A DNA stretch of 64,000 nucleotides. Origin: Takakia lepidozioides. Lineage: Eukaryota; Plantae; Bryophyta. Position numbers and translations under genes: made by a program. Below the pieces are notes generated by a model. It worked only from the letters and a program-made list of their open reading frames with translations. It did not search any database and was not told where the DNA came from. The stretch is from assembly GCA_030704615.1 (NCBI GenBank), contig CM060731.1, forward strand, positions 38,316,001 through 38,380,000, given 5' to 3'. Below, piece by piece: positions 1 to 57,297 of the stretch (within the stretch, counting starts at the first letter, position 1; each line of letters starts with the position of its first letter).

Positions 1-127
1 ACCATGGGTACATCAAAACAATGCTGACTTTCTCGAATATTCACACTTTGTTACTATCTCAAAGTCTAACTAACACCTCTATGGGATAGTCCAAACATTA
101 ATTTGAGAGGGAGTGAGAGAAAGAGAC

Positions 128-9019
<8,892 letters not shown>

Positions 9020-9517
9020 GATGTCTCCCTCCTCCTCACCCCGCTTCCCACAAATCCTTTCCACAATACTAGAACATTACTCGCACACTGTCATGAATTC
9101 CCCACCCCCCTGCACCCTCTGTCGGATCAATCCGGTACACACCAAAGCTCTGCGACGACGGGCAGGGCAGGGCTCCGTCAGCACAAGCTGGGCAGCAGCA
9201 ATCGTGCGAAGAGGCACGATTGTCCGCAGGCCTGCATCCCTGTGTGTGTGCGCTGCTTCAGGCCCGGACCCTCGCTCCCCTCCCTCTTCCACCTCTGCTG
9301 CTCTCTGTCAGCGACCCAGCCAGCTTCCACCCTCGCTGTGATTAGGGCTCCCCGCCCCACGTCTGGGGCTCGAAACCGCAAACCGACGGAATCCAGATCT
9401 AATCCGCCGACAGTGCACGTGTTCGAAGACCGTCCGTGTAAGTATTTGAGCTTTATTCCACTAGGGAAAAGACACAATCAATGCAATTTTCCTCTATGAC
9501 ATAAATTCTTTTGGTTT

Positions 9518-9827: not shown

Positions 9828-10769
9828 GTTAAAAAATTAAAAAATGGGGTCCAAATTATATGTAGTGGGGTCCGACCTAATGTTTAGTTTCCATAGAAAA
9901 CAACTAAGAAAATAAAACTAAGAAAATTTGTCTTTTTTTCTGGTGCTGAAAGATAGTGAGCAAGTCCGTGGGAAGAGACCAGTTGGATAGTCCACTAGGT
10001 GGCAGACCTAGCTCCCACGTGAGCTTGCACCTTGATAGGTTTGGTGATGGCCTAGCTGTTGAGGCAACTGGGGCCTACCACATGACCATGGCACCAAATT
10101 GATGAGAGATAATGTGATAGCTTGGGGACCAACACAATTTGGAAGAGAAGATGAGAGAAACAATAACATACATAAATCAGATCATAATGCTTTATCCAAA
10201 GATCACGGGAAGAAGCCCATGATTAATATAAAAGTAAGTTGTCCAAAAATGAGAGCACATTCACCGTTCACGTGAATGAACATGTCAAACTACAACTACA
10301 ATCCCACTTGGTAAAACTATAGGCGCAAACCCGATCAGGCCCTATCATACACATAAACGCCTCTCATTTTACAATATTAGGGTCTTTATTGCGAACGCGA
10401 GCTGACCGCTGGGCCTGTCCCCCCCCCCATCCAGTCCGCTGTGCCAGTCCCCTCACGTCCACTCTGCCAGTTTGCCCGCCAGTCCGCTGCCCATGAGTCC
10501 ACTTCCCTCCAGTCCGCCAGTCTGCTGGCTAGGACGCTGCTGGCCAGTCCGCTCCGCCAATCCCCCAACTTCCAGTCCACTGACAACGCCCGGATTTGGA
10601 CCATCCGTTCCGAAAACCCATTTGAGCCCTCTGTTTTTAGGGCATGAATCCAAACCTTATCCCTACCGCCTGCCACTTGCCACTTGCCAGTAGCCACGAA
10701 CGTGCGCACTGTTGTTCCTTGCACGTTGTCGATCGTGTCCAGGGTACTGGTGCGCATTTCTTGCAGTTC

Positions 10770-13700
10770 TGAAGCGTGTCATTTGTACTGTACAGGGCAT
10801 GGACGTGGAAGCAGAAGACGATGATATATTGAAAACGGAAAGTCCGCTTATACGGCCTCTTTGACAATGTTTGCAAACACCAAAACCAGGACCTTTCAAC
10901 ACGAAGGACCTCAATGAGTGAGACGCAATATGGGTCTGGGTGTGCAAATGGATGTTTACAAGGCCTGCATACCTTGGGATAGAATTGATGATTTTGTCCT
11001 TGGAAAAGAGAGTTTGGTGGACTAACCCACTCAGTTTTGGGTGAATGTCCATACTAAAGTGGAACCCGGCGTGCGAAGAGCGCCCAGAACCAATACATTT
11101 CTAAACAGTATCAAGTGTGCACCATCCTCACCGTCCTTTTGTAGACTCATTGCATGTCTGTTGCCATTTTTGTTTCCTACATATTATGATTTCATGCTTC
11201 CACAAGTCGATGGATATCGATTTTGAATTTATGTCCAGTATCAATGCTGCTACGGTCCTGATGACAAACACACCAACAATGCAATAGTGGAGGATCCAAA
11301 ACTGAAGTGTGGAGGACCTCTTGTGGGTGCTGGAACATCTCACTCTCATAAAGGCCCAAGGAGAAAAAAGTCGGAGTATGGATGCAGTCTTACGACCGTG
11401 GTTGCCAATATTGTTTCAAGGTCCAGCAATGTTATCTCGCCCCTAACATTTGTGTCCTCACGTACTGTAACAACAACATGGAGCATACAGATGCAAAAAG
11501 GAAAGCCTCAGCTGAGTTTAGGAACATTCGCCACACCTGTGTACCACACATTAGTGAGGAATTGAAATTCTGGGTCGTCGAATGTTTGTGTCGAGGCCTG
11601 TCAGTTGCCCAAATCATGATGGAACATAAAGAGCACGTGATGAACAACACCGGGTTGGGAGATGCATGGACATGAGATGATTTCTTGTTGGAGCAAGATG
11701 TCCGCAATCTGGCCGAGAAACGAGCGTGACAAACATTCAAAAACCACGCCAACGATGTGGAAAGTGTCTACATGTAGAAAGACCAGAACCCCGCGTCGGT
11801 CTTCTTCTATCAAGAGGAGAAATTGGCGCCAACATTCAAGCATTACGATGGAGACTTGACATTCACAATTGGCATACAGACTGAGCGGCAAAAGAAGCTT
11901 CAATTAGGTCATCCCCGTATTGTTGCATGCGATGCAACCTTCAGGACAAATCATCACAAAGTATTCTTCATCTCTTTCACTATTTTTTTGCTTGCACAAC
12001 TTGTGGGTGTGAGCACATTGGCTGCATCTGACTTCTGCATCTAAACAGTTTCCATTGTACATATTGATGGTCTTCGACCAGTGGCTTAACGATATACCAG
12101 TTGTCTTCATCATATCCGTGCGTAATCGGACAACAGACGTGGTGTCATGGATGACAGCCTTGCGCGACTCATTCCTCACAGATATGCCAAATTGGCGACC
12201 CAATGCCTTCATTGTGGACGATGGCAACGCCAAAATAAACGCTATTACATAAGTTTCACATACCCTACCTGTACACCCGCGTCGAAGTCCGCTGCGTTGG
12301 TCCACTGTCAGTCTCTTTGGCAAGTCCCCTGACGGGCAAGTCGGCAAGTCCGTTGCCAGAGTCCTTTCTGCATGTCCGCTGGCAAGGAAGCCCGCTCAGA
12401 AGCTCATTTGGCCACGTCCGCTGGCAACCCAGTCCGCTTAGAAATGTCCTCTGGGCAAGTCGCCTGGAAGACTCAATTGCGCAAGTCCGCTGGCAGGTCA
12501 GTGTGGTCAAGTTTGCTGGCATGTAAGTGTAGGTACGTCTGCTGCCGGCCTCCTAAGGGCAAGTCCTGGCAGAACAGTGTGGGAAGCCTGCTTGATGACT
12601 CCTGTAGGCCAGTCCGTCGGCTGGCTCCTTTGTGCAAGTCTACTGGCAACTCAGTCCACTCATAATGTCTTCCGGCCAAGTCCGTAGGATGACTCACTTG
12701 CGCAAGTCCGCTGGCAGATCAATGTGGTCAGGTCTACTGGCAGGTGAGTGTGGGTAAGTTTGCTGCCGGCCTCCTAAGAGCAAGTCCGCTGGCAGAACAG
12801 TGTGGGAAGCTTGCTGGAGGACTCCTATAGGCCAGTCTGTCGGCTGGCTCCTTTGTGCAAGTCTACTGGCAACCCAGTCCACTCAGAATGTCCTCTGGCC
12901 AAGTCCGCTAGAAGACTCACTTGCGCAAGTCCGTTGGCAGGTCAATGTGGTCAGGTCTAATGGCAGGTGAGTGTGGGAAAGTTTGCTGCCGGTCTCATGA
13001 GGGCAAGACTCATGGCAGGTCAGTGTGGTGAGTCTACTGGCGGACTCCATTGGGCAAGTCCACTGGAACAAACTAGCAGACAAGTCCATTGGGACAGTAC
13101 ATTGGGTTAGTGCCGAAGTCCACCGGCAAGTCCCATCTCAAGTCTCTCATGTGGACATGTGTATTTTGCAAGGTTGTTTTTCGAGGAATGCTCATTTTCA
13201 TGTGCGGCCTTTGGCATGTCCGGAAGGCTTGGGTAAAGTAATCATGCAAGAAAACCAAAGATCATGTCACTGCAGCAAACTTGTTGAAGATATGGAAGAC
13301 CTCATGTACTGTAGAGGTGGACCAAATGATCCAAAAAAAACTCTTGCGTGGGTTGCAACAACAATCCGAGGTATGAGAAAGAAATATCCGAATGGGCATG
13401 AATTTCTGGACTACATCGACATTGGATGGGCTCCTAGAATAGCAATTTGGTGTACAATAGCTCGTCATGTTCCGTATGCCAGTCAAGACACAAACGTTAG
13501 CATTATTTCCTCTCAGATCCAGTCAAAGCTGCCTAGTCTGGTTATACTAGAAGATGCAAAAACTGCCACTACTCACTGGTCGTGTACTAACACACTACTG
13601 GTATGCCAGGATGCAACGGAAGAGTAACATTGCAAAATGGGATGTCGTGTGCCGCAAACATAGAACTCGACATGTATTTTTAGGACTGTTTGTCATTTCT

Positions 13701-14388
13701 TATGAATCCGTGCGTCTTTAGGTGAATTGCCAGCTATGAACTCTCAGTACCAATCACCCAAACATAACTTACATTGTTTACAACCCCGGATGCGATTGGG
13801 CTTCTTGCACTTGCCCATGGGCAATGAAGGGTAATTTGTCACCAAGTCCGAGTTCTGAAGTTGCATCATCCACACTTGCAGGATGGACTCATAGTGCGCG
13901 CTTGTGGCACGACGCTGGGAACCATTCATGGAGGATTTCATAATCTGCTATTGCACAATGAGAGCGGCGGCGATCAAGAGGGTTTGAAAAATGCAGCATA
14001 CAGACCTTCCACAGATTATTTTCCTTATGATGTCGAGTCTATCCTCGTACCAGCCTCCATGGACGAAGAATTTGCAGACATACTTTGCATTGTTGGTGAT
14101 GACAAATACCTGGAGAAACATGTGTCCTATCTTCGAATCTGTAGGGGTCAACTTGTTGATATCCTGGCCAAGAGTACTGTAGGAATGTTGCACCCTGCGG
14201 CAGCAAAAAATTTCCGTTCTGTAAATGACAATAAAAACATGTATTTGAAAAAAAACGAGATTTCGTCGAGGCATGTAAAACGCGACCCAGAGTCTTGTGG
14301 AAAACATGCAAGAGGGTTGGTGCCCCAACACCTGCAGCACATATATACTCCACAATTCGTAAGGTTGCAGACCATATATCTATTGTAA
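10770..14388 (+). pseudogene. Degenerate MuDR/MULE transposase with SWIM zinc finger
   Basis: Fragments in several frames: ACDATFRTNHHK (first catalytic D region), ILMVFDQWLNDIPVVFII...WRPNAFIVDD, LWHVRKAW (~13210), YASQDTN and SWIM-like CTCPWAMKGN (~13807). Multiple stops and frameshifts; boundaries approximate. Confidence 0.8.
12280..13140 (+). repeat. Internal tandem repeat of the MULE (~222-bp unit, ~3 copies, built from caagtccgctggcag sub-motifs)
   Basis: gactca(a/c)ttgcgcaagtccg recurs at ~12470, 12691 and 12914 with conserved intervening sequence. Confidence 0.85.
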
Positions 14389-15413
14389 AATACACTCCAA
14401 AATACAGGAAATGCTACAGTATGATTTTCTTGATGAAATAAAAGATCTGTAGTATGATTACATGTGCACAAGACTATAGACATTCAGTCTGCCCAACACA
14501 CCAAGTGAATACATTCATGTTGCCCATCGTGTGGTGTAAGATCTGCTGGATTCAAGAGTAAATCTGCTGAATTCAATCTGTTAGCTGTCACTGGTCTTCT
14601 GTTCAGTCTGACAGTTTTCGAACCAGTCTGCCAACATGTCTTCTAACTCGTCTGCTGAATAGTCTGTCAAGCAGTCTTGTACCGAGTCTTCGCGGTCTTC
14701 TGACAGTCTTCCAACCCGAGTATATTCTGCAGTCTTCTAACCAGTCTGTTCACTGTCTTGTTACTAGTCTGTTGACTGTCTTCTAACCAGTCTGCTGGCA
14801 GTCTTCAAACAAGACACATTGGCGATATCGAACCAGTCTGCTGGCAGTCTCCGCAGTTTGTTGACAGTCTTCTAACTAGTCTACTCATAGTCTTCTAACC
14901 AATCTGACATGTCCATCACCAGACTGACCACTCTATGTAGTCTGCAGGTGGATCCATTCATATGTAGTGTTTATTCATGCAGTCGGCCGACCAGTCTCCA
15001 ATCAGCAGATTGACAGTGCTGAAACGACCTAAATTGTCTACAGTCTGCTACCGAGACTGCAGTCAATCAGTCTACTATTTCCAGTCTGTCTGCTCAAAAT
15101 CGTAATGGATACGACAATGGACCATATAACAAAACAATGCAGTACCCAGAGGCAACAACAATATTCATCATTCACCAATGGATGAGTAAGCGAAGGCATC
15201 AACATGTTTTTTCGGTACAAAGACTTCACATGACACGTACAAATACTACACAAGTCTGCCAACTATCTGTCATGAGCAGCTTTCTCCAAATATTCCAAAC
15301 CGTGCACGATATATTTTGCACATTGCAGTCACTGGCTAAGTGCAAACTTAAAAGTAAACCACGTCGTAGTGAAAAACACTCATCTCTTTGTTTTTTTTAT
15401 TCTTATCAACATT

Positions 15414-17540
15414 TCATTTGGTTTTTACCCATTCATAAAACACTTGAATGAATGACATGACGTAAAAGCCACATTCCCAACTGAATGGTTGTTGTGGCAC
15501 TTTGGGTTGGTGGAGTTGACATGCACAAACAACCTCCTGCCACTCTGGTGTCAAATCCGAATAGCCCAAGCACTCTACATGCAGCTTCCGAATCCATGGC
15601 AGAATAAATGGAGCATGATGCAGACTCTTGATAGAATTCATGTGAGTGTAGGACCCTTTCCGAAGGTCGATGCAAAGAAGACTCTAGTGCCCCTTGCATT
15701 AATGGTATCAAATAACATTATGTCACGAAAGGTGCATATTCAGCTGCTGCAGTCCAAGCAGTGCCAACAGAGTTAGTAGACGCAACACGACTCAAACTAT
15801 CCAGACGCACTCACCAGTCTTCTGTCCAGTCGTAGACCAAGCAGTGCCAAACAGAGTCAGTAGACGTAGCATGACTCAAACTATCCAGACACACTCACCA
15901 GTCTTCTGTCCAGTCCACTTACGCTTAGCATACTTAGTCTTGTAGGCAGTCCAGGAGACAGACAATTTAGCGGACTCAACAGACTCAGCAGACGAAGACT
16001 CGGACTCAACAGACTGTGAGTTCTTATGCGAGTTCTTACTTGTCAGCAATCGGGACCAAAATAAACTCGCAGTCTTTTATGTCTTTGCCAAGACCAGACC
16101 ATCTTGAGGTAAGACCCCAGTACTTTATAGACAGACGAGAAGACTAAGCAAACCGAGCAGTCAGAGCAGACTAAGCAGACTAAGCAGACCGAGTACAGCA
16201 GACTCGACAGGACTGAGAAGACTCACACAATGAATCGACAAAACAGACCAACGCTACTCACTGCTGGATCTCTCGACAAAGACTGACTTCCCTGTCCATC
16301 TCGAAACCATTTTGTGGTCTTTGTTCATAAACACAAAGGACTTTTTCTTGGGATCAAGTTTCTTGGGATCAGGACCCTCCCCAACCTCTTCGGCGAGGTC
16401 CACGACAGCCCGCTTCTTCGCTTTGTCTCTACCTTGGGAAGCAGGCGGTGCTGCGGACGGGTTGGATTGAGCAGACTCACGCAGTGCTGCGGTCCGGCTC
16501 TGCAATAGAACCGTGTCTTGAGGTTTGTTGACACTTGCTGGACCGGTCCTCACAACCTCACGCGAGGCATGCGTAGAACTCACCGGCCTCACATCCCTTG
16601 CACATCCGGCGGCATACTAAAGACTATGTTACCTATCTTTGTCGTCAACCCGACGTTGGGTGCATGGGCAGGTGAGTCCACTGCGACCGATGGCGATGTC
16701 ACAACGTCCACATCCATCATGGGACCAACATCCTCCAAGAGCAATAGCCAGAGTTACTGTGACTTTCAATAATTAATGAAGGTGCAACATCAGCAAAAAT
16801 AATGCTTAAATAATGTATGAACAACTTGAGTGGGTGGGGCCGTTGTTGGGTCGTCCATTGTGGCGTTATGGGTACTCACTGCAAACAAGCTTGGTGCACA
16901 ACAGACCTGGCCAGCAGAGCCACAACAAATAGACTCTTGTAGCAGAACAAACTGTTAAATGACAGTCTAACAGACTGATATTGATAGAGAACGAGTGTCC
17001 AATAGATAGACGGTTCAACAGACTGAGGAAAGAAGAAGCGAGAAGATTGACGGGAGAATAGACTGAGGGTAAATCAGGAAAGTCGATTGTCCTCAATTGT
17101 CAAATTTCAATGGACATGATCCAGTCCGCCGGGCCTCAAACATCCACGCGGACTTGCGGAATGCACATGTCTCAGCCTGGTCCGTCTCCTTGCAAATTGG
17201 GCAATCACCCGAATCTGCTCCTGATCCTCTCTTGGTAGACGGTCGTGGCTGAGGCCTTTGCATTCAACAAGTTTTTGTGGATGTTTGAGGACCTTAGGAC
17301 TAGATCTTGTCCGTTGACGCGATGAGCAGTAATGCTGGAGTTTACTGCCAACCCCTCTATTATATGACCTGGATCCTTCACAATGCATTGTTTCTTCGGG
17401 ATCTCCATTTTGCTATATTTCTGCACGCTCCCTGCAAGTCCTTTTAATTGGTCCCCTAAACAGTCCCATCGTCTGATATGATATCTGCAATGTATACACG
17501 CCTCTATGTGCATATGCTTCCGCGATTTTCGCCATCATGG
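15414..17540 (-). pseudogene. Degenerate ULP1/C48 SUMO-protease-like gene carried by the MULE, convergent with the transposase
   Basis: Minus-strand peptides RWSGLGKDIKDCEFILVPIADK (~16040-16110, followed by a gtaag donor) and VPQQPFSWECGFYVM (15414-15641 ORF) match the C48 peptidase pre-His strand and the Gln/Cys catalytic motif. The upstream extent to ~17540 is inferred. Confidence 0.65.
15752..15915 (+). repeat. ~83-bp tandem duplication inside the MULE
   Basis: ccaagcagtgcca...gactcaaactatccagac.cactcaccagtcttctgtccagtc occurs twice in tandem. Confidence 0.85.
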
Positions 17541-19016
17541 GTTCCGTTGACGAAGGGGGGAAGCGTATCATGAGGGATCAGAAGCAGATGACAATATGGA
17601 GGACAGATAAGGCAGTAGCGATTTTATGACATACAACCATACCATAAAGCCTAACCTTCCCTAAAGCACAACAAGAAGACAAAAATAGTGGAAGCACATG
17701 CACAATGGTGGCTGTAAAGCTCGCCCCGCCAGTCCTGCCATGTTCAGGCACACCCTTCACTATCATGAATGTCGCTCGTGCACAAGAAAAACACGGACGT
17801 GCGTGGAAACGCCCACCACAACATTTGACAACAAAGAGCCCTCACAAGAGAGAGGCCGGATTTGGTGGCAAGGCCTAGATTTTCCCAGCCCTAAAACTAG
17901 AGGGCTCGGATGGATTTTGAATTGGATGGTCCAGATCCGACGCCGTCAGCAAACTGGATGACAGGGGACTGGCTGATGGACGCGGGGTAGCGGACTGGAC
18001 TGGACTGGCAGACTGGAAGGCAGCGGACTTCGGGCGCGGCTGGTCCATGCGTGGGGCCCACGTGTCACCTCGGGCAATGAAAACCCTGATATGGTAAAAT
18101 GAGAGGCCACATAAACTCAAGCACTCCCTAATGTCTATTTATTGGAGTGCAATGGGATTGCGGTTATGCGCAATGTCTAGGAAATTAATAGCATCTGTAA
18201 TTTGTTTGATTGATCATTCCATAAACATAAAACTATATCATATGATACCTGAAAACTTTTCGTTTAGAGGACGGGAAACAGGCGTGAGATTTGAACCCCT
18301 AAGACTCCGGTCTATTATCCAGGAGACGACCAAACTGGCAGTCAGCATCAATATTAAGGGGGAAAAATGGTGAAAATGGACAAACCTTGAAACACGGATC
18401 TCTGCATATGGAGGAGCACGAGATAAATCCATTACTTGTGAGAACGCAATCATCTTGCCTTCATGTATCCTGGGTTGTCAATTTCTCATTTCACTTATCT
18501 GCCCATTATAATTTTAGATTAGCAAAAGGCCATCATGGAGCGGTGCATGACAAAGATTTTTGCAGCCAACCTTGTCATTTTAGACATTCCCCATGGCCTC
18601 CTTGTTTTGATTGTCCTCCCCACTTATGCTACAATTTCATGGAATGCACACGACACTTGATATTGGTCGTGGGTCTTTGGATTTTGCAAACTTTTCTTGT
18701 TGGATGGGGGAGTTCCACTCCTTACTCTTGGGACAACCGGTCTTGTGGGGAACTTGCTACCTAACTTATCATATCCAATTGTGAGGGCTCAGTATTCTCA
18801 AATCATGGATCTGTGCGTATAGGCTACCTCTGGAAAAATTGGATTTTCCTGGACAGGAAGGTACTGTCAATCCTCTAGCTTTCATTTCCTTTGATGTTCT
18901 TATAATTGCAAGGTATATTCTTGCTGCGTGTTAACTGTGGCTCTCACTCGTATTCTTCTAGACATAGGGCTTCTTTGCAGGATGTCTCACCAAGGTGCGC
19001 AAACCCTTCAAGTTAC

Positions 19017-21553
19017 CTTATCATCTCTTGATAAAACAAGATAGACTAAGCGCTCCTTCTCCAACAGCTGGTTCTCATACTGAGTAAGCAACTCATGCTG
19101 CACTTTCTGCGCAGTTAGCAAAAAGACAATGTTTAGCAGGAAAAGATATACTTATTGTCTTTACTCTAACGAGCGTACTCAGGTGTTCCAGATTGGAAAG
19201 AAGACATGTTGTTGTCAAGAGGCTGACAGGGACACTACTCAGCACGAGGGGAAGCAGCCCTACCAGTGCCATCCACCTCTCATGGCCAGGCTACCAGCAC
19301 CTACTCCCTTGAAGGGCGGACTCAACATACCAAGACCACACAAGATTGCTATCCACTGAAGCCCAGCCATTCAGCACTTGCTGGCAACCTGTGACGAGGA
19401 CTCTATCACCAAAACCCTAACTGCAATGAATGTTGTACATAGGGGCCTTCAACTGAACAATGACACCAGATAGTCTTTGCATAGTAACTTGAAAGTGGAA
19501 CAGATGGACCAGTAAAAATGGAATTTGCCCAGAATTTTCCAAAACCCTAGAAAGAACAAACCGCTACAATCGGAACATGCTGTATAAATTCCACAACAAA
19601 TTGATGGTAACAAGTAATAGTAACAAGAAACAGGAGGGCCTTACCTCAAGCAACTTCTGCTCACTGCTGGCATGCAGATAATGCCCAACCCTTTCTTTCT
19701 CTCTCTTCAAACACTCCTCAGCCTGGAGTTCATGAGGCAGTTCATTAGCAGGAACCAGTTTAATATTCAAGCTGAGTACAAGTCCACAAGCTTCCATGCA
19801 TCTTAAAAACCTAAAAGAACAAGGAATACAACCCTGAGCTAAACATGAGTGGTTTAGCTTCTCCATACCTTAAGCATGTAGTCTGGGCATGAGGCCTCCT
19901 CAATCCAAGATGCTGCCTTACGAGCATAATAAGCAGCGGTGTCTTCGAGCATGTAAGTTTCAAAGTCAGTCTCATATGCATTCATGTTACCCATACCGAT
20001 CTCCATGAAGATGCCAAGCACATTCTTCAACAGTGCCCGATCAATCTGCTCGCCTTCACGCTCACGATCAACCCAGAATGGAATACAGTCAGGCAAGGGT
20101 GAGTTGAATCACAGAAAGAATCACCATACCCTAAAATTTCTGACATTTGACAAAAACTATACCACCTACGGAGCTCAGTCCACTAAAAGTCATGGAAAGA
20201 TGCAGAGTATGCGGAGAGCAGTCGTACCAAGGTGATTACTGCATCCTTCACAGTAGTTTTCATCTCTGCGTACACCTGCACTTACAAGGTACCACAGACA
20301 CCCCACGTCAAGCATGTGGCAGATGAAAATTGCACCACCAAACAACTCTAACACAATCTGCAATCACCTTCACAGCTAATCTCACTAAGAAATGTCAAGA
20401 CGAAGTATATATGATTTACCAAATAGAGGAAGGAATTGGATCAACAAAATCTCAAAACAGATTTGAAAGGGCTAAAGTATTGCCTCAAGAAATCCAATAA
20501 TAGCACTACAATCCCACATGCACAGTACACATATTCAAACACAAGGGGCTGCAAGAAGGGACACTACTAATTCCGAATACAAAATCCGTGGGCCCCAAAA
20601 GAACATACCAGGTCACGAAAACACATTAACCCCACTTCCCTCAGGGCTGGCACTTTCCGCTTAACAATGAAGTAGCGATCTAGATAATTGAAAAACCGTG
20701 ATAACCACCGCACCATAAGGTTATGATTGTCCCACCGCTTGACAAGCTCCCTCAGCATTAATTCGTCATGCTTTTCTCTTAGCGCAGGTAAAACCTGTTG
20801 AATACGTAGCCACTTCCATCGTTAGCCCCTAGGGAACTGCGAGGAAGCCATTCAAGAAAATAATCTGAAGTTCAAAATCGCACATGTACTAAACATCAAA
20901 TTGCATCAGTTTAAGCCCGGTTTCATCATCCACCCCGAAGTACTCAGCTCTTTCCAAAACGTCTACCCATCAGGTCCCTAACCCCAACTTGTTCCCTCCG
21001 CCTCTTAAGGTTACCCTATCCCAAAATTTTGTTCTTCACACTGATCGGTAACAGCTTTGCCAAAGGTCAGTAATTGTGCGGCGAGGCGAAATATAGTCCT
21101 TCGCCACGCCCTATCAAGGGAGATGATAAGACAGGTCCAAGGACATCCATACATACATTTGCATTGATGTACTTCTCGAATGACTCCCTGTATCTATCAT
21201 AAAGCTGCCGGGAGTAGCCGTACGGAGATTTCGGTTTACACATTTGGTAAACTGCTCTATAAACTCCCAGTTAAGAAGCACGTTATAACTTCCCCCAGTA
21301 ATTGACAGAGATTTACAGCACAAAACAGCATATGACGAGGATCGCATCACAATCCGTTACGAAAGCACAGATTATACAAGCGACCGAACATGAAGATGAC
21401 TACGAAAGGATACGTGTAATACATAATATAGTCCTCCGAGGTCACTTGGTCCGAGACACCTTCCAACATGTTTTCTAGCTTGGTGATCCCCTTCTGCACG
21501 ATTGCCCATCCCTCCTCCAGCTCCATCACCTTCCCCTCGTTGTTCTTAGGCAT
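19017..21553 (-). CDS. Truncated CUL1 paralogue (exons 1-7 only, ~280 aa N-terminal domain); functional or pseudogene status unresolved
   Basis: Exons 21414-21553, 21157-21256, 20609-20794, 20228-20275, 19869-20072, 19645-19722, 19017-19106 are colinear with CUL1 exons 1-7, including introns, with no internal stops or frameshifts. Homology ends at ~19006. The native exon-5 acceptor is removed by a 10-bp deletion. Confidence 0.85.
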
Positions 21554-22352
21554 GATGTCTCCCTCCTCCTCACCCAGCTTCCCACAAATCCTTTCCACAA
21601 TACTAGAACATCACTCCCACACCGTCATGAATTCCCCACCCTCCCTGCAATCTCAGTCAGATCAATCGCTACACACTCAACCTCTTCTGCCACAGTGGCC
21701 CGAGACCTTCGCTTCTTCCTCGAACATCCTCTTTCCCTTCTCTCATTTCTTGTTAACAAAGTTTTTGACTGAGGGATTAGATTTGGTTCGTTAGGTAGAG
21801 TAGCTCCAGCTCAACCATTCGATCGCCAAGCAAGGTGTGGAATGAGGTGACAACAAGGAGTGTGCACGAGCTAACGCTGCGCTCGCGAGAACGGTCACTT
21901 TTACGACGGGTAAAAAAAGTTTGATACTCTAGTTGACAAACCGTTGCGGGCGATTCATGGATGACATTCATCCATAATTCATCGCGGGTTGGAAGGTGAC
22001 CCGAGGTGCTGCCCGGCGAGGTGTAGGGTGGGCGCCCTCGCTCGGTCTCATTCTCGTCTCGAGTCCGAGGGAGGGGTGCCAGGCCGATCGACGTCCTTCC
22101 TTTGTGTTTGCTTGTGGGGAAGGAGCGAGGCCATCAGTAATAGTGTCGTCAGGCACTGGCATGCAGTAAAGGCGAGGGAGGGGACGGCTGAACCCTGGTT
22201 TGCGTAGCATTGTTGTGGCAACTTGGTGCCTTCCTGTCAAGCAACAGGCTGCAAATTTGACGCTTATAGGCGCATGCCACAGTGCTGTGGGTTAGGAAGT
22301 CTAGGTTTTTTTCTTCTGATCGAAGGATATATCCACATCTGTGCAAGCGGGG

Positions 22353-25300
22353 ATGATGGAGGATGAACATGAGGTATACGGAGGAGAAATTCCTGAGGAG
22401 GTGGAGGGGGATTTGGAAGGGGACGTGGATGGGCTCCCCGACGATGGAACCTCCAAGGTGGATGACGTCGTTACAGACGATGCAGCTTCTAAGGTAGTTC
22501 GGACTCGGGTGCGATGTACCTTTCATGGAGTGGATGCGGAGAGCTTAGCCGGAAATTTGTCGTGATGGATCTTCTGGCATTGTCCGTGCCAGTTCACAAT
22601 GATAAGAATGGAAGCTCTGTATGCAGAAAGCGAGGCATGACTTTTTAGGGTCTTTTCTAGGTGTTGCAATTCTTGAGTTCGGGCTGTACAGAAGCCTTTG
22701 GAAACAGAGTTTGAGAATAACGTCTGCGTGCATTTGTCTATGCAGTCCAAGGAATATAGATCACGTTAGTAGAGACACAATCCTTAAACCTTTGCCAATC
22801 CTTTGAGAGATTGACGTTCTGTTTGCAATTCTCATATTCGAGTGTGAACAACGAATAGTATGAGCAGCAGTGGTGGTGCACATGAGAAGCTGGTTGTGGC
22901 TTGGAAGCTAACTTCACATGTTTGAAGATTTTGGATGATATTAAGGCTTCGCATTATGCAATTTCTGGGAAGCTAAATGGCGATAGACAAGCCTGTCCAT
23001 CAAGAAAATGATCACGTTTCAGCATACTGCAGGATAACAATGTTGCCCAAGTCCTCATAATTAAGCTAGGGTGCATGTTTTGGTTAGGGGAGGGCTGATG
23101 CTAGGTATGCATGTTGTGAGAAGCCACATTGGTGAATGTTGCTAGAGCTTTTAGCACTACAATTCTTTCACCATATGTCCAATGAAATATTGGAGGAATG
23201 ATTGGTTGGATGTATGTTTTGGAAAGCTGAGAGGTCTTGACATACTATCTGGCAATTCTTGTGCTGGAATGTGCTGGAAGATATCTGTTCAGAGAGAGCC
23301 TTGAACCGTTCCGTGATTGGCGACATTCCAACCACATGGATTGGTGTAGTGTTTTGTTTAAAAATGAGTCTTTGTGGGTGTTTTTAGATAAGGTGGTACC
23401 TGGGAATGTGGTAAAGACTCTGCTTGGATGCTGCTGAAGACGTATTGAGGCTCAATGGTTTCTGAAGTTTCCTGGCATCAATAGATGCGATGCCATGTAA
23501 TGGAGTGCCCATGCAGTCCAAGTGGTAAGGGATAGAGTATGCTACATACTGAAGTTAGGGCACAGAATCATGGACAGCTGCACAAATGTGTATGAGCTTA
23601 CCGGTTTTATAGGATACTAATTCTTATTCTCACTACATGTTTTATGTATGTGGTGGCTTAGGAGTTAGAGGAGATGAAAAAGCGTTTAAAGGAAATGGAA
23701 GAAGAAGCTGCTGCACTTCGTGACATGCAAGCTAAAGTGGAGAAAGAAATGAGTGCTGTTCAAGGTGTGTCCTCACAGCCTGAGCCTTGAGCACTCAATT
23801 TCCTGGAAGTCAGAGTAGTGTATTTTCTAGCATCAAGAATTTGCACCTTTACTTGCTTGTAAGCTTCGACTTTTAAGTCAAACAAAACAGTTGCGTCCTC
23901 ACACTTGTTCGTGGTGTGTCTATCAACAGCTCATGTTAGATTGCCATCATGGTAATATTGCAGATTGGGTCTCTTTATTGATGGCCTGTAAGGCACAGAG
24001 CCACAGTTGGTTGTGGATCCGTGACGGGTACATATGACCCTTCTCTTTCTCTCTCCTTCTGGACGAGAGAATTTGTTGTGAAAGATTGGGTAAGAGTGAA
24101 ATGGGATATGAAGTTGTACCATGGCCATGCAGATCCAGCAAGTGTGGCAGCATTGCAAGCAAATAAAGATGAGGCAGACACACGCTCTGTTTTTGTTGGC
24201 AATGTAAACCCTTCACTTCACAGCTGTAAACCTTTTTTGTTGTAGTTTCCTGGTTAATGGTTGGTATCTAGTTGGGAATGAATTGATGAAGCTTCTTTAA
24301 ATAATCGTGAAACAGTAGCATAAATTTGTTTAAAAGTCTTAAGGTGACCTGTAAATTTACTCGGCTCTTGAATGCTGCTTTCTATTATGAAAGGAATGCA
24401 CTGGAGTTGGTTCTAGTTGCTTGTAATGGTTGTTCCAGATAATTTGTCCCCCTCTATCTGTTATGATCTCTCAGTGACTTTGAAGAGCAGTACTATCGTA
24501 TTTTGCATTAGGACAGCTCAATTTTGAAATTTCCTGAAGAAAACTCCCAGTAGTTGAATCTAGTGGAGAGAATGTAGAAAGCTGGGAAATGTGAGTTTAA
24601 CTAAAATGAGTAGGAATTTCTTTGACAAAATGGGGACTCCACTTTTCAGGTGGATTACTCTTGTACTCCTGAAGAAGTGCAACAGCATTTTCAGTCGTGC
24701 GGAACAGTAAATCGAGTCACAATTCTTACAGACAAGTTCGGACAGCCAAAGGGGTTAGTGCTTAAGACCCCTCATCAAGTCTTCACATCCATTTGACTTC
24801 ATCATCGGTATTTGAAGTGACATGTGTGTAAGGAGGTAAGAGTAACCAACATGTGATAGATTAAGTTGCTGTAGTTATCCATATGTAGAATTTTCAGTGA
24901 TCAACGGATAGCCCATGGTTATACCTCTGTTGCGATAGTGTTGGTGACAGTGGGTTGAAGTGGCAAAGAGTTGTTATCAGCATAGTTGTGTTGAGGTCAA
25001 CCACCATGCTGGGGTGGGGTTAGAAGCTCCTCAAGTTGGGTACCTTGGGATTTTTGACTCTCTGTATGAAGAAATTGCAACCAAACTTTCGTGGGTGCAC
25101 TAAATCCGCCATTGTAACTGAATGGTAACTGTGTTTTGTGGCTATGTCAGTTATGCGTATGTGGAGTTTTTGGAGGTTGAGGCAGTGCAAAATGCGATAT
25201 TGCTAAGTGAATCGGAGTTACACGGTCGCCCACTCAAGGTGTCCATATTCCCGTGCCCATTTCCTGCTGATCTATAGGGTGAACAACTGTGAAGTCCTGT

Positions 25301-26116
25301 GTTTCATGTGGCTGGCCTTACCAAGTGGGTAGACGTCTGCAGCTGCGAGTGTCATGGTAGTTGTGTGGAGTCTGCCTCACCTGGTTGCTTGAACAACTTC
25401 GTATGGATGGATTGGGAGTGCCAGGTTGTGGGTAGTACCCATGCTGCACTTGAACCAGCTGTAAACACGTTTTTTCTGTCAACATCATAGCCAGTTCCTA
25501 TTTGCTGCTGGATTGCTTTTGGGCAGTGGACAGTGACTGGGAATGGTGTTTCCAGGTCGGTTAGCTGACAAGTCTGTCTGTGGAGACTTGGTTGCAGGTG
25601 ACCTTAAAGAGGACCAATGTGCCAGGAATGAAGGCATTTCGAGGCCGCCGATTCAACCCTTATTATGGGTACCGCCCCAGGAGGCCCTATCTGCCTCCCT
25701 ATGGGTATGCCCCCTATGGTTATGGGTGGGTATCCACAACGGATTTCCATTCTGACTCATGTGGTGTGCATATTTCATGGCTGACTTTAATCTTTATTTG
25801 TTTTGTGGTGAGGGTAACTTGATAGTTTTCAACTTGCAACAACGGTCACGTGGGCTGCACACTGTCTAGGTTCTCATGCTGTCGGTTTTTAAGGGTGCCT
25901 GCAAGCATGCATATGTTGCCCTCTTATCTGTCAGGAGAACTGCCTTTTATGGATTAGAGGAAATGTATCCGAGTTATATGCTTTGCTTGCCACATAAACT
26001 TTGAGGTCGAGAAACTCAGATGGAGTGGTCCTGAAATACTGATGCCTGTTGGGTGAATGCATGTCAGGAAGGTGGCGATGTTCAGGAGACCTATGCGCTA
26101 CAGGCCCTACTATTAG
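22353..26116 (+). CDS. PABN: Nuclear poly(A)-binding protein (PABN/PABPN1 family), 227 aa, 7 exons
   Basis: Exons 22353-22493, 23662-23764, 24133-24203, 24650-24753, 25151-25238, 25598-25725, 26068-26116. Contains [10 protein letters not shown], coiled coil [23 protein letters not shown] ([21 protein letters not shown]...PKGYAYVEF), KRTNVPGM and a C-terminal RYRPYY. Confidence 0.95.
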
Positions 26117-27152
26117 GCAACAATTTTTACGGTGGTTGTTGTAGTAGATTCAGCTACTGGAGGTAGCAGTAGCAAAAGCAATAGTCCAGCCAAGTGCAAA
26201 TTGTGATTTGGGACCCACTCTTCAGTTGGACAATTGGTCTGGTATTTCGTATTTGAAGCCGCATCCATCACCCTCCGTTCTGTGTTTACTGTGTTATTAT
26301 GTGTGCTTTTTGGGCAACCCTTGGACGCTGGTAACGTGTGACATGTTGATGTGGTTCCTGGACTGCATGTTGGGAATAGTTACACCTGGGTGTGCCAAAT
26401 GGCAAAGTAGTGTGCCATGGTTCTGTAAGTAAGCACTGGGTAAGCAAGGTCTGAGAAGAGTTGGTCGGGCCTTCGCAATGATGGGGTAGTTGTTAGCAGT
26501 GCACGAAGTTTTTTGTATTTGCCTAGTTTGCTTGAGCCTCTTTTAGACAAATTTTGCAAGGCATGTCTTGTGTGACAGATAGTACCAGTGTTGGGCGCAT
26601 ATCAAGGTCGGGGTTTATGATATACCCTGGCCCGCCAATTGCTTGATATCCTGACCCGGGTATTGAACTGCGTCCTTACCCGAACTCGACCCTATCCTGA
26701 ACCCAAGCCTCTAAGGATACCCTGACCCTACAGGTTTATATCTGTTTTACACCCACAGTAGCCCACCGCACCTCACCTACTGCGTCTTTTTCTATTGGAT
26801 CACACACAAATATGCTAAAAAGATAATTACTTACTCCCTTTTTCTATTGGACGTAGATGTGTGGTACTTGCTGTTTCTCCCTTTGATTTTGGCTGGGCTC
26901 GTCCTCATCCGGATTCCGGGGGTGTGTAATCTAGTACCTTATGGCTTCTGGGGTTTTACTTTTTCAATCTTCAATAAAATTATATGCCAGTGGATTTATT
27001 TTATTTTAGTTATTTAAAAAGAGAGCGGTGCCCGATAGTTAAAAAGGAAAACAACAAAAAAAGAACCGGGGTGAAAGATATTAGGGTCTTTAGGAGGTTT
27101 GGTTTTCAATTCTTGTCAAGTGGTAATGTGTGTACCGCGAGGGTGGGCGAGG

Positions 27153-45545: not shown

Positions 45546-45569
45546 TAACGTTACACCGCAGGTGGGGCC

Positions 45570-46195
45570 TTGGAGCTGGTCTCGGTTGGGAAGATGTCCG
45601 CGAGAAAGGATTTGTGGAAAGGAGGACGGCCATTTAGCAGAGAGAAGCAAAGCGAGCCCCTGTGAATTCGAGGAGGTGGCCACATTGCAGAGTTTTTTGC
45701 GCACCGTTTCGGTGGTCTCACCAGTTGTTGTTGCTGCACACATCAAGAAGCAAAACTGTTTTGTCTCCATGCCGAGGTACATTACATTCCTCTATGTAGT
45801 TTGCAAGTTTCTTTAAGTAAATGTCCAGCTATGAGGTGTTTTGGGAGTTGAGTTTCTCGTGTGGGACTTGATCGTATCTTTCCAGAAGAATTACTTCGAA
45901 GGATGGAATTCGTGGAGGGTTGATTCTCATTGGGTCCAGTGTTTTGTTTCCCTGGTTTCTGTGATTGAACTAGTTCGCTTCTTTTGGATTGATGCTACTG
46001 GAATTTGTTCTCTCCCATCTACGAATCTGTATCCCTCTCAACCTTCTTCTGCAGGCTTCATACGGTTGGATGTCCAGTGAACTTCCGCATTTGTCGTCGT
46101 TGCTCATATGTGACGAAATGGTTCCTCTGCTTCTGGTTGAAATTGTTCTAGGCGCAAGGCGTTGTCTGAAGATGTCATGAGGGCCCATCGACGAC
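45570..46195 (+). repeat. Direct-repeat copy of the 5' leader, micro-exon and first intron of the SWIM-RING gene (other copy 57711-58350)
   Basis: Near-identical sequence from tggagctggtctcggttggg to gagggcccatcgac. A 10-bp deletion (gaaccccctg) frameshifts the copy into a 25-aa peptide MPRRKALSEDVMRAHRRPQMHYMIV*. Confidence 0.93.
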
Positions 46196-53860: not shown

Positions 53861-56403
53861 GCATACAGGTTGAGAAACTTACATGGTGTCAGCATTGCTA
53901 GAATCCACCAGTGGCTTGTATGTATATGCATTCGTGTCGGCATTGTTTATCTGTCCCAATTTGAGCAATCCCTCACAATCAACATCAGCATCTTGCCTGT
54001 TCCCAAATTACTCCAGTGTTTCCAAACATGGGATCATGGGGTTATATCTCACCCAACTTAGCTTAGAACTCCATCAATCACAAAACCAAGAATGTCAATG
54101 CCCAACTTACAAGGGTTCCACAACCATGCTCAAACATTGTGTGAGTGTAGCAGAACAACTGCAAAAATACAACAGTAGAGCCCAGCCAACAGAGAGAGAG
54201 CTGAACGAAGCCTACCCAAATGTCAACATGACCAAGCTTGCTCTTAGCCAAATCAGTTAGTGCTTCTAAGCTTTTCGCATCTCGAACATCACAAGCCTTC
54301 CCCTGCCAGCACGAAAAATGAAGTGACTACTACTGCCCACCTGTCCCATAGGGGCCTTCCAATTGCTACCTGGGTATACAAGCACAACCTACACAAGTAA
54401 AACTATAACCACACTTGGTGAAGAGTGACTTAGGACATGTAGATCTTAGAGAGGGATCACTTGGTACCAAGGGTAGCTTGTTACTTAATCTTAGATATTG
54501 TTCCGGGGTTTGAGACCTGCAGTTTTCTAGACAATGGCTGGTCGGGACCCTTTCATCCAACGAGAGAGGGGAATTAGAAAGGACAAACCCACCCAGACAC
54601 GTTGCTCCCCAAACTCCCCTTTGAGCTCTTGCACTGTGTTCTGAACCCGCTCCTCTGCAAGCAGCGATTGAGAAAGGCCAAATCCAGCCAATTAAAGCCG
54701 GAAAAGAAACAAAGAAAGAAAATTATCATATGATAAGAACGGCAGAGGGATTGCAACCACCACAGCACTGACAGATGGCCATCAACACTCGTTCTGCCTG
54801 AAGCCTGGCTTCCTAGCTAGTTGCAGAAGTGGATGATTACTTGCCATCCATTCTCAGATAATCAACAAGCAAACCTGGAGAATAGTATGAAACTACAGAG
54901 TCCTTCCCACACAAATTGAAGGTCCATCCCTGATTCCAATTAGAATGTACTCATAAGACGTCGTTAGCTGCTCACCTAGTGCTCACCTAAGACTTCCTAC
55001 TGCTCACCTAAGACCTCTGCTACTTAGTCAGTGAGGTCATGAAGTGTCCTGTACATGGACATGTGAAGAAGAGCAGTTTGATGGAGAGGAATTTGAGCTG
55101 ATTCAATTAATGCAGCTATCTCCTCCCGTAGTATTTTCTGTGCTCTCCATCTTGAATATTGTCAATGCCTGCCAAGATAGTGGCCACGGAACCATCCCAT
55201 GGCACCTCACCAGGGAGAACAACCCATGCTGCAGCAGCTTCAACATTTTCTGCTTCAGCCAAGATACCAACCACAACGCCTATCCGTTGGACCTCAGATT
55301 CACTTGTCTCTAATTCTGCCATTGTTGTGGCCAACGACCCATCACCTGACATGACATCTGGGAGAGCAGACAGGGAGCAGACAATGCGTCTTCAGAATCA
55401 ATTGCTTCCAATTTGCCAGAACTGTGGAAGGCAAATCATCTTCTCTCATTCCCTCCAGGGTAGCCATCAACAGTGCAGCAGCTTCGCGTCCTTCAGCCGG
55501 TCTTGGAGATGTTGCACTACCTAATCCTGTGGGTGGCGGTTGTGGCACCATTTCCCTCACTAGTCTGGCCAGGTTTTGAAACTTTCTGTAGATAGACGGC
55601 ACAAAATAAACGGGAGGCTCCAGAGCAAGGTTGTTTCTTATGAAGTTGAATGCTGCAGAAGAGAACATGTACTGATTTTTTCTAATTTCCTCAGTTGGGC
55701 GGATGCCTTGGCTGCTTTGGAAAGAACAGCCTCAAAGGTCTTGTCAATTCCACAAATCAACGCCTTACTTAGTTTCTGTCACAGTTTTCTGTCACCAAAA
55801 TGGTACAACCAAATGTGTTACAGAAGAGATGCATCTATGCAGAGAAGGTACCGAAATGTGCTAGTTGTTATTTCTAAGTTTTCCACTGTGGTTGGACACT
55901 TCTTTTCATAGTCAAATGTACTCAAAGCCTAGGAAGCACTCACACAGAAGAAAAGCAAGTGATCAACTTATGACAGCAAGCAAATCCACTCATCTGCAAT
56001 TGGGAAACAATGACCATCTCCGACCGGCAGCAACCATACAGATAACCTCCAAGGACATTTTGTCCTCTCAATTGACCTGCTCTTTGCTTTCCGATACCAA
56101 TTGTACACTATATTAATTGCGAATACATCCAAATACATACTTTCCTCAACTGCAACCATGTAAGAAAGTGAGTTCCACACTAACATTTGTAACCAGTCCT
56201 ACATCATGGTGAATGAGGGGGCCAGGTAGCCGAGAATCCTGACTGAGACCTCAAAAAACTGAGTTGGCTGATTATGAGTCTGTTTTTTTAGAGACAAACA
56301 AGAGAGAAAGCCTGTCCAACATATGACACTTGCAGAAGTTGCAAAAGTTTCGCAAAGTCAACCTCCAAGCACCTGCAATTTACTCCAAGTCTGGCCTATT
56401 TGC

Positions 56404-57297
56404 TCAATGCAATACTGACCAATAGTCTTCACTGAATTCTCTGAGGTCCTGCGCAGTGAACTGAAATTCACCTGGGAGAACACCTTGGGGCACAACATCA
56501 AAGACTTTATCAGCAGGAATCACAAGCTGAGGGCCATTATATTGAACATTGGCTTGCAAAGTGATAGACTGCATAAGTCCTATGTTGGGACAAGAAGTGG
56601 AACCAACCGGTTGTGTCCTAGGAACATTTTCCCACCGCTCGATAAGAATTTCTTGTGGCCTTTCGTTGATCCTCAATATGATGACTATGCGGGTTCGTCC
56701 ACCACTTTCGGTGAGCCAGAATTCTGCATCAGCATGCAACTCAACAAGTGACTCTAACAGGCCAACTTCAATCACAAAAGTTGGCCAATCCCCTTCCATG
56801 CAAGGAGACCTGGGTTTGTAAGCCACATTCGCTTCCTTCGATCTGCGTGAGGGGTCTCCAAATCTGGTTGATCGAAAATTCACAATCACATTTCGGGGAA
56901 GGCCTAGATGACTCAGCCTATCATTGAACATCCTTCCAAACTCTGTTGCCACGACCTCATGCACTACACCAACTATGAGCTTCACAATCAGAATCTCTTC
57001 TCTCCCATCGTATAGAATCGTCATGCATGGTAGCCATCCATGTCCCTCCTCGCGCATCATGTCAATCTCATCAACCGTCCTTTTTTTTACATCTCTAAAA
57101 GCCAAGTATTGAGATGTCCGTATCCCCTCAATCAAACTCTTCCAGCGGGTCATGCAAATCTCTTGGAAAGCAACCAAGTCCGTGAAATGGACTGGGCAAA
57201 TATTAGGATATCCGGTGAGCACTTCTTTCAAGTTTGAATCCCTCGAAGTTGGACTTGGATCCCTCACGACATTCTCCCAGCCATGGTATAACGCCAT
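56404..57297 (-). CDS. Intronless restriction-endonuclease-fold (fungal/Crinkler-type) protein, copy 2, 297 aa, full length
   Basis: Open ORF from MALYHG, paralogous to copy 1 over its whole length. Motif variants SKEANVAYKP and EVGLLES. A probable 5'-UTR intron acceptor (gtgcag) lies just upstream of the ATG. Confidence 0.8.
   Translation of the reverse strand: MALYHGWENVVRDPSPTSRDSNLKEVLTGYPNICPVHFTDLVAFQEICMTRWKSLIEGIRTSQYLAFRDVKKRTVDEIDMMREEGHGWLPCMTILYDGREEILIVKLIVGVVHEVVATEFGRMFNDRLSHLGLPRNVIVNFRSTRFGDPSRRSKEANVAYKPRSPCMEGDWPTFVIEVGLLESLVELHADAEFWLTESGGRTRIVIILRINERPQEILIERWENVPRTQPVGSTSCPNIGLMQSITLQANVQYNGPQLVIPADKVFDVVPQGVLPGEFQFTAQDLREFSEDYWSVLH

What the first reader, a model, noticed from the sequence alone, without database searches (positions are those of the whole stretch)
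19006..21690. Truncated CUL1 duplicate with accelerated change in the adaptor-binding helices: candidate decoy or dominant-negative cullin
Seen: exons 1-7 of CUL1 are duplicated with introns and have no stops or frameshifts. Intron 2 is identical to CUL1 for over 80 nt next to exon 3 and exon 6 encodes an identical peptide. Yet exon 2 differs at 12 of 33 codons ([15 protein letters not shown] becomes [15 protein letters not shown]), exon 1 ends IMYYT vs IMLYT, and exon 3 has YFIVKRKVP vs YFIARRSLP. Established: helices 2 and 5 of cullin repeat 1 bind SKP1/adaptors, and N-terminal CUL1 fragments lacking the RBX1-binding and neddylation domain act as dominant negatives. Inference: exons diverging faster than introns fits positive selection better than neutral decay, so this may be a natural SCF decoy or a cullin re-specified to another SKP1/F-box or pathogen partner.
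Basis: partly seen in the sequence, partly recalled or inferred. Interest (0 to 1): 0.82.

Follow-up and report, generated by a model that had tools for sequence, protein, structure and literature searches.

The report
Expressed half-length moss CUL1 duplicate
A moss carries a young, transcribed half-copy of CUL1, the scaffold of the SCF protein-degradation machine; it keeps the adaptor-binding half, lacks the enzyme half and has changed unevenly, so it may be a natural SCF inhibitor, though it also shows signs of decay.

Summary
The duplicate is real: CUL1 exons 1-7 (minus strand, 21685-19004), about 12.5 kb upstream of an intact CUL1, with no later exons. Two independent RNA-type runs hold copy-specific spliced contigs that read through exon 7 into a new 3' UTR. 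The product is 284 aa: cullin repeats 1 and 2, without the RBX1 or neddylation part. All amino-acid changes lie on the copy's branch. Repeat 1 has 36 changes in 133 codons, repeat 2 has 6 in 134 (p=2e-7), and 7 cluster in the new tail. Uniform neutral decay is rejected; positive selection is likely but depends on the neutral yardstick (p 0.004-0.22). Helices 2 and 5 are not singled out (p=0.45), and the known SKP1-contact tyrosines are kept. Sphagnum independently has an expressed copy ending at the same repeat boundary. Best reading: a ligase-dead, adaptor-binding cullin fragment shaped by selection and now partly decaying; binding is untested. The scan has no earlier cullin note in this genome.

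The parts
19004..21685 (-). Partial duplicate of CUL1: 132 nt upstream of the ATG through 13 nt of intron 7
   Evidence: BLASTN and alignment to 6347-9151
21554..21767 (-). 5' leader of the duplicate; the transcript reaches at least 82 nt beyond the homology breakpoint
   Evidence: X5 contig 21568-21767
21414..21553 (-). Exon 1 (helix 1, start of helix 2); 15 aa changes and one codon deleted; L46Y creates a cryptic GT donor at 21422-21421
   Evidence: joint 20792-21421 in X5
21157..21256 (-). Exon 2 (end of helix 2, H2-H3 loop, helix 3); 12 aa changes in 33 codons
20609..20794 (-). Exon 3 (helices 4, 5); 8 aa changes, 5 of them at the end of helix 5 and the following link
20763..20876 (-). 114-nt run identical to CUL1 across the intron 2/exon 3 border (short conversion tract or splice constraint)
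   Evidence: p=0.0008
20228..20275 (-). Exon 4 (repeat 2); 1 aa change
   Evidence: copy-type exon 3-4 junction in X5 and X6
20073..20227 (-). Intron 4, whose 3' AG is removed by a 10-nt deletion in this genome; next AGs at +12, +24, +27 (in frame) and +19 (out of frame)
19869..20072 (-). Exon 5 (repeat 2); 5 aa changes versus 8 synonymous changes
   Evidence: copy-specific contig with 0 differences in X5
19645..19722 (-). Exon 6; peptide identical to CUL1
19017..19106 (-). Exon 7; 7 clustered changes at codons 272-279, just after the end of cullin repeat 2, making the tail more hydrophobic
19008..19016 (-). Read-through of the exon-7 donor: Val-Thr-stop, giving a 284-aa product
18342..19007 (-). 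New 3' UTR (about 640-670 nt), unrelated to CUL1
   Evidence: contigs 18342-19095 (X5) and 18370-19095 (X6); no similarity elsewhere in the window
128..9019 (-). Parental full-length CUL1 (last exon runs off the window start); retains the ancestral residues
10359..18107 (.). 7,749-bp Mutator-like insertion between the copies: imperfect long terminal inverted repeats and an exact 9-bp target-site duplication; no transposase recognised
22036..26117 (+). Head-to-head neighbour, an RRM gene of nuclear poly(A)-binding protein type; its promoter region probably drives the duplicate
   Evidence: RRM_1 hit, spliced RNA contigs; PABN identity from sequence and own knowledge; shared promoter inferred

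Best explanation
A 2.7-kb piece of CUL1 (exons 1-7) was copied next to the promoter of a neighbouring RRM gene, became transcribed, and acquired a stop and 3' UTR by reading through the exon-7 donor (shown). The product is cullin repeats 1+2, the part that binds SKP1-F-box adaptors, without the domain that binds RBX1 and is neddylated (shown by sequence and model). For most of its history it was under selection as a protein: the frame and repeat 2 were kept while repeat 1 and the orphaned tail changed fast (uneven change shown; positive selection inferred). It most likely works as a ligase-dead competitor: it holds a subset of SKP1-F-box modules, with shifted preference, away from full-length CUL1 and so stabilises their substrates (inferred, not tested). 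Selection now looks weak or variable: this genome has lost a splice acceptor, and one RNA sample makes an out-of-frame isoform (shown).
For: Copy-specific spliced contigs and 3' UTR in two independent studies. All aa changes are on the copy's branch, while synonymous changes split 11 versus 9. Repeat 1 has 36/133 changes versus 6/134 in repeat 2 (p=2e-7); branch omega is 2.0-2.6, 0.24-0.32 and 3-4 for repeat 1, repeat 2 and the tail. In 75 other plant CUL1-like proteins the two repeats diverge equally (0.27/0.27) against 0.26/0.05 here. At intron rates, keeping an open frame has P about 0.013 (no frameshift) x 0.13 (no stop). There are 13 multi-hit codons versus about 2 expected. The adaptor-facing tip including loops is enriched (20/49 versus 16/84, p=0.006). 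Residues matching human Y42/M43, needed for SKP1 binding, are unchanged, and the human N-terminal 249 aa carry SKP1 binding (PMC4737497). The fragment ends just after helix 245-267, the end of repeat 2. An independent expressed Sphagnum copy stops at codon 269.
Against: The single-ratio branch omega is 1.04. Omega>1 in repeat 1 is not significant from coding sites alone (p=0.13) or against the two fastest introns (p=0.22). The exon-5 AG is deleted in this genome. In X5 the exon-2-skipping, out-of-frame form has higher contig depth than copy-type exon 2 (15.1 versus 8.2; depth is a poor measure). Changes hit strongly conserved positions (T49, Q56, K106) and could simply abolish binding. No protein or binding data exist, and no orthologue in a sister species could be examined.
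Confidence: 0.42

Rival explanations
1. Transcribed pseudogene: expression is a by-product of the neighbour's bidirectional promoter, the copy drifts neutrally, and the uneven pattern comes from local mutation-rate differences and patchy gene conversion.
For: Overall branch omega 1.04; acceptor loss and out-of-frame isoform; introns differ in divergence (7-17%, p=0.003) and one 114-nt identical run suggests some conversion; exon 1-2 nonsynonymous divergence equals intron 1 divergence; short cullin N-terminal models are common in plant annotations.
Against: All-neutral codon model rejected (p=1e-6). Repeat 2 has normal synonymous but low nonsynonymous divergence, which conversion would not give (p=0.001 under equal branch rates). 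The frame is kept. Seven exon-7 changes fall at codon position 2 (P=0.003 for that position; cluster p=0.004).
Confidence: 0.25
2. Escape from toxicity: the new fragment was a harmful dominant negative in a haploid plant, and selection favoured changes that weaken its grip on SKP1-F-box modules or spoil its splicing.
For: Explains fast change in repeat 1, hits at conserved positions, the donor made by L46Y, the acceptor loss, and similar changes in Sphagnum copies.
Against: One early stop or promoter loss would do this faster than 36 substitutions. The key tyrosines are untouched, repeat 2 is conserved and expression persists.
Confidence: 0.13
3. Remnant of a once full-length CUL1 paralogue that specialised for another SKP1/F-box partner (as self-incompatibility CUL1s did) and later lost its 3' half.
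For: Fast repeat 1 with conserved repeat 2 is what adaptor re-specification of a working scaffold would give; present-day decay fits loss of function after truncation.
Against: No trace of exons 8+ at protein or DNA level. The transposon has an intact target-site duplication and so did not delete them. The tail changed exactly where repeat 3 would begin and is still polymorphic (G274 in X5), which suggests long life as a truncated gene.
Confidence: 0.12
4. Bait or binder for a non-SCF partner, such as a pathogen effector that targets CUL1, with repeat 1 changing in an arms race.
For: Fast surface change around a kept core, with continuing nonsynonymous polymorphism between samples (Q20H, Q64R, G274V).
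Against: No immune-receptor domain is attached or adjacent, and there is no evidence of any such partner.
Confidence: 0.08

Closest known systems
Engineered dominant-negative CUL1 (human residues 1-452; PMC4737497)
   Same: N-terminal fragment that includes the SKP1-binding region and lacks RBX1 binding and the neddylation site.
   Different: Natural, shorter (repeats 1-2 only), with 36 substitutions in repeat 1; binding and dominant-negative action not shown.
Small N-terminal-only cullin-like genes of plants (mentioned for Arabidopsis in PMC2785787; e.g. Arabidopsis OAP14984.1, Fragaria XP_004301752.1, Acacia KAK4265739.1)
   Same: Short CUL1-derived proteins with only the Pfam Cullin N-terminal part, often changed around helices 2 and 5.
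   Different: Those diverge evenly over repeats 1 and 2, and many may be annotation fragments; no function was found in the papers searched. This copy is young, shown transcribed and strongly asymmetric.
Sphagnum magellanicum CY35_12G069100 (KAH9545863.1) and a 400-aa S. jensenii copy
   Same: The S. magellanicum-type copy is a spliced exon 1-7 transcript reading through the exon-7 donor and ending at codon 269. Changed positions overlap (9 of 20 Sphagnum-changed sites also changed here, p=0.026).
   Different: Independent and younger origin: each copy is far closer to its own species' CUL1 at synonymous sites. The metatranscriptome contigs may be chimeric.
Truncated-duplicate inhibitors (human SRGAP2C, plant microProteins) and Solanaceae/Rosaceae self-incompatibility CUL1 paralogues (from own knowledge)
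   Same: A partial duplicate that keeps an interaction domain and loses the effector part; or a CUL1 paralogue specialised for an adaptor.
   Different: Those have demonstrated functions; the self-incompatibility CUL1s are full length.

Membership tests
Plant CUL1 (cullin) family, by descent | Cullin-repeat N-terminal domain (Pfam PF00888) and CUL1-type sequence and intron positions | tested here: met
   Exons 3 and 5 pass the PF00888 cut-off; colinear exons, 83% aa identity to the adjacent CUL1
Functional SCF scaffold (CUL1) | C-terminal cullin-homology domain (RBX1 binding) and neddylation site | tested here: not met
   No exons 8+; the transcript ends in a new 3' UTR after exon 7
Dominant-negative / decoy cullin | Lacks the RBX1 and NEDD8 part | tested here: met
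Dominant-negative / decoy cullin | Transcribed and spliced in frame | tested here: inconclusive
   Copy-type exons 1, 2, 3, 5, 7 and in-frame junctions 3-4 and (by exact depth sums) 4-5 are seen in X5; an out-of-frame isoform also exists; the acceptor is lost in this genome; no contig spans the whole frame
Dominant-negative / decoy cullin | Known SKP1-binding residues retained | tested here: met
   Y43/I44/Y47/T48/Y51 match human Y42/M43/Y46/T47/Y50 and are unchanged; helix-5 core unchanged; neighbouring residues changed
Dominant-negative / decoy cullin | Protein made, binds SKP1-F-box and stabilises SCF substrates | not testable with these tools
   Needs proteomics and binding or degradation assays
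Unprocessed pseudogene | Disabling lesions | tested here: inconclusive
   No stop or frameshift in exons; one lost acceptor with in-frame alternatives; the two RNA samples appear to splice there normally
Unprocessed pseudogene | Neutral, uniform divergence (omega near 1 throughout) | tested here: not met
   The mean is 1.04, but the all-neutral model is rejected, p=1e-6
Positively selected gene | Omega significantly above 1 in a region | tested here: inconclusive
   Repeat 1: p=0.004 (with introns), 0.01 (equal branch rates), 0.13 (coding only), 0.22 (fastest introns)

The most novel reading that the evidence does not exclude
Early-diverging mosses repeatedly evolve natural, expressed two-repeat CUL1 fragments that are kept by selection and retuned on their adaptor-facing surface, and that act as selective SCF inhibitors by sequestering particular SKP1-F-box modules.
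Probability: 0.28. Interest if true: 0.8.

Novelty: new variant of a known kind. Interest (0 to 1): 0.52.

Why it matters
SCF ligases control auxin, jasmonate and many other plant signals through one shared CUL1 scaffold. Dominant-negative CUL1 fragments are laboratory tools; the papers searched gave no natural example kept by selection. Short cullin-like genes are annotated in many plants and usually set aside as fragments. This copy offers a clean test of whether such genes are regulators: it is young, sits beside its near-unchanged parent, is expressed, has a short list of substitutions, and has an independent parallel in Sphagnum. If it proves to be drift or detoxification, it is still a clear case of how a potentially harmful partial duplicate evolves in a haploid plant.

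Tried and rejected
Alternative-frame or antisense ORF as the cause of the position-2 cluster in exon 7: other frames are closed by nearby stops or give only a short antisense stretch; rejected. Chimeric continuation into downstream exons: RNA shows a plain read-through UTR; ORFs in the intervening element gave no Pfam hit. Deletion of the 3' half by the transposon: target-site duplication intact. Specific acceleration of helices 2 and 5: p=0.45. Gene conversion as the cause of repeat-2 conservation: synonymous sites and flanking introns are not homogenised. X5 contig 20607-20794, which looks like a copy/CUL1 hybrid, was treated as a probable assembly chimera and not used for allele calls. Synteny with the RRM neighbour: absent at the Physcomitrium and S. 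jensenii loci fetched; the S. magellanicum chromosome locus could not be fetched. The word search with exon 3 found no protein with the copy's residues; this search sees only similar lengths, so the blank says nothing about orthologues. PDB search found no plant CUL1, so contacts could not be computed. Paper searches for Arabidopsis truncated-cullin loci and CUL1 interface alleles gave nothing, and four classic papers were not held. The big protein search was not used. The joined spliced model was not sent to any search or folding tool.
Full report
Observation. The window holds a full plant CUL1 on the minus strand (ATG at 9019, exons traceable to 128 against Physcomitrium CUL1). A second copy of its 5' part lies at 21685-19004 and aligns to 9151-6347. 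The copy has exons 1-7 at 21553-21414, 21256-21157, 20794-20609, 20275-20228, 20072-19869, 19722-19645 and 19106-19017. Exons 3 and 5 pass the Pfam Cullin cut-off. Similarity ends 13 nt into intron 7, and no exon 8+ sequence is repeated in the window. The next AGs lie at +12, +24 and +27 (in frame) and +19 (out of frame); upstream AGs, or retention of the intron, truncate the product.

Organism and setting. The intact CUL1 differs from a Sphagnum CUL1 transcript at 5 of 264 residues but from Physcomitrium at 28 of 283, so this is an early-diverging moss. About 5,079 windows of 64 kb give 325 Mb, the size reported for Takakia lepidozioides (PMC13120521); this identification is an inference. Between the copies lies a 7,749-bp Mutator-like element (10359-18107) with terminal inverted repeats and an exact 9-bp target-site duplication, so the copies were about 2.1 kb apart before it inserted. 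Upstream, head to head, is a spliced RRM gene of poly(A)-binding type. The copy's transcript starts at or above 21767 and the neighbour's at or below 22036, so a shared promoter region is likely (inferred).

Expression. Two runs from different samples and studies cover exons, leave most introns empty and show GT-AG joints, so they behave as RNA (contigs only, no strand or level). Both hold contigs that run from exon 7 into sequence found only behind the copy (18342-19095 in X5, 18370-19095 in X6). The exon-7 donor is therefore read through, and the frame closes after two more codons at 284 aa. Both runs show separate CUL1-type and copy-type exon 3-4 junctions (depth 30.2 and 27.9 in X5; 119.1 and 54 in X6). 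The exon 4-5 junction lies at the normal place, with depth equal to these sums (58.1; 173). I read this as both transcript types splicing normally there, so the acceptor deletion is probably private to the sequenced individual (inferred). The DNA run lists no insertion at that place, which fits a real deletion. X5 also has copy-type exons 1, 2 and 5, and a joint from a new GT at 21422, created by the L46Y change, to exon 3. That isoform is out of frame and gives 48 aa. The X5 allele has ancestral Gly at codon 274, probably ancestral Gln at 64, and a private Q20H, so the copy is still changing between samples.

Pattern of change. With moss outgroups, every assignable amino-acid change maps to the copy, while synonymous changes split 11 to 9 between the branches. 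Pairwise dS is 0.146 and introns differ at 10.2% of sites. A structure model of the natural Sphagnum fragment P0199 (pLDDT 92.8; 257 of 283 positions identical to this CUL1's exons 1-7) places helices 1-5 at 12-30, 40-55, 63-87, 91-115 and 117-127, and ends repeat 2 at 267. Repeat 1 has 36 changes in 133 codons, repeat 2 has 6 in 134 (p=2e-7), and the 16-codon tail has 7. This is not the usual cullin profile: 75 other plant CUL1-like proteins diverge equally in the two repeats. A three-sequence codon model gives branch omega 2.0-2.6 for repeat 1, 0.24-0.32 for repeat 2 and 3-4 for the tail. One shared ratio (1.04) and the all-neutral model are both rejected (p=2.6e-7 and 1e-6). Which part departs from neutrality depends on the yardstick. 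Omega>1 in repeat 1 has p=0.004 with all introns, 0.01 with equal branch rates, 0.13 from coding sites alone and 0.22 against the two fastest introns. For exons 1-2 to be merely neutral, the copy would need about five times the parent's synonymous rate; the 11:9 split does not suggest that, and repeat 2 would then be under strong purifying selection. Simulation at half the intron divergence expects 9 changes in exons 1-2 (27 seen), 2 multi-hit codons (13 seen), about 4 frameshifts (none seen, P=0.013) and a stop in 87% of runs. A 114-nt identical run suggests a short conversion tract or splice constraint (p=0.0008). Conversion cannot explain repeat 2, where synonymous sites diverged fully.

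Where the changes fall. Helices 2 and 5 are not richer in changes than the rest of repeat 1 (p=0.45). The tip that includes them and their loops is richer (p=0.006; a partly post-hoc grouping). Alignment to human CUL1 pairs Y43/I44/Y47/T48/Y51 with Y42/M43/Y46/T47/Y50. Y42A/M43A abolishes SKP1 binding, and the first 249 residues carry that binding (PMC4737497). All five residues are unchanged, as is the helix-5 core, while flanking conserved positions changed to residues absent from 120 relatives (T49A, N52Q, T55K, Q56P, D61G). That fits retuned rather than destroyed binding, but does not prove it. The tail changes begin where repeat 3 would start and raise the mean hydropathy from 0.5 to 1.7.

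Relatives. Short N-terminal-only CUL1-like models are annotated in many plants, and small cullin-like proteins were noted in Arabidopsis (PMC2785787); many may be annotation fragments. Sphagnum has its own copy (CY35_12G069100). Its transcripts splice exons 1-7 (one retains intron 1), read through the exon-7 donor and stop at codon 269, followed by a 16-nt deletion. One form, and a 400-aa S. jensenii copy, changed repeat-1 positions that overlap those changed here (9 of 20, p=0.026). These copies are much closer to Sphagnum CUL1 at synonymous sites, so the origins are independent, unless an old copy was repeatedly converted, which I could not test.

Mechanism and verdict. Shown: a transcribed, spliced, two-repeat CUL1 fragment without the catalytic half, with strongly uneven amino-acid change and damage in some alleles. 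Inferred: selection on the protein, positive selection on repeat 1, and action as a competitor that holds SKP1-F-box modules away from full CUL1 (0.42). Rivals are a transcribed pseudogene (0.25), selection to disarm a harmful dominant negative (0.13), a remnant of a specialised full-length paralogue (0.12) and a pathogen bait (0.08). It is a CUL1 by descent, not a working SCF scaffold, and not yet a demonstrated decoy.

Method note. The joined protein was not sent to any search or folding tool; exons were joined only inside local scripts for codon counting, and a natural Sphagnum transcript product stood in for the fold. The big protein search was not used.

Noticed in passing
window:10359-18107: Mutator-like element with long imperfect terminal inverted repeats, an exact 9-bp target-site duplication and internal tandem repeats (12360-13060, 15751-15915); no transposase domain found by Pfam in the ORFs tested.
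   Followed up: partly
L008:1-1841 and L009:97-903: Sphagnum transcripts of an independent exon 1-7 CUL1 duplicate ending at codon 269; the two contigs differ in repeat 1 (alleles, paralogues or assembly chimera).
   Followed up: partly
L010:10079-14783: Sphagnum jensenii 400-aa CUL1-like gene with changes in helices 1-2 (W16R, L46F, T48K, N52K) and a stray exon-6-like piece at 16851-16928.
   Followed up: partly
L005:1078-2505: A plant CUL1 locus from a metagenome in which the introns between exons 4-7 are missing while introns 1-3 remain (partial intron loss).
   Followed up: no
P0296, P0311 (Acacia crassicarpa): Annotated proteins carrying both a SKP1 POZ domain (PF03931) and a cullin N-terminal domain, with locus tags close to a short cullin model; could be fusions or mis-joined models.
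   Followed up: no
window:20763-20876: 114 nt identical between the two copies across the intron 2/exon 3 border; a conversion tract or a constrained splice element.
   Followed up: partly
window:48775-49715 and 56384-57299; 45569-46192 and 57709-58350: An inverted duplicate (80% identical) and a direct duplicate (92%) in the right half of the window.
   Followed up: no
window:23662-24205: DNA and RNA runs hold other contigs matching the RRM gene's exons with different joints, suggesting further paralogues or retrocopies elsewhere in the genome.
   Followed up: no
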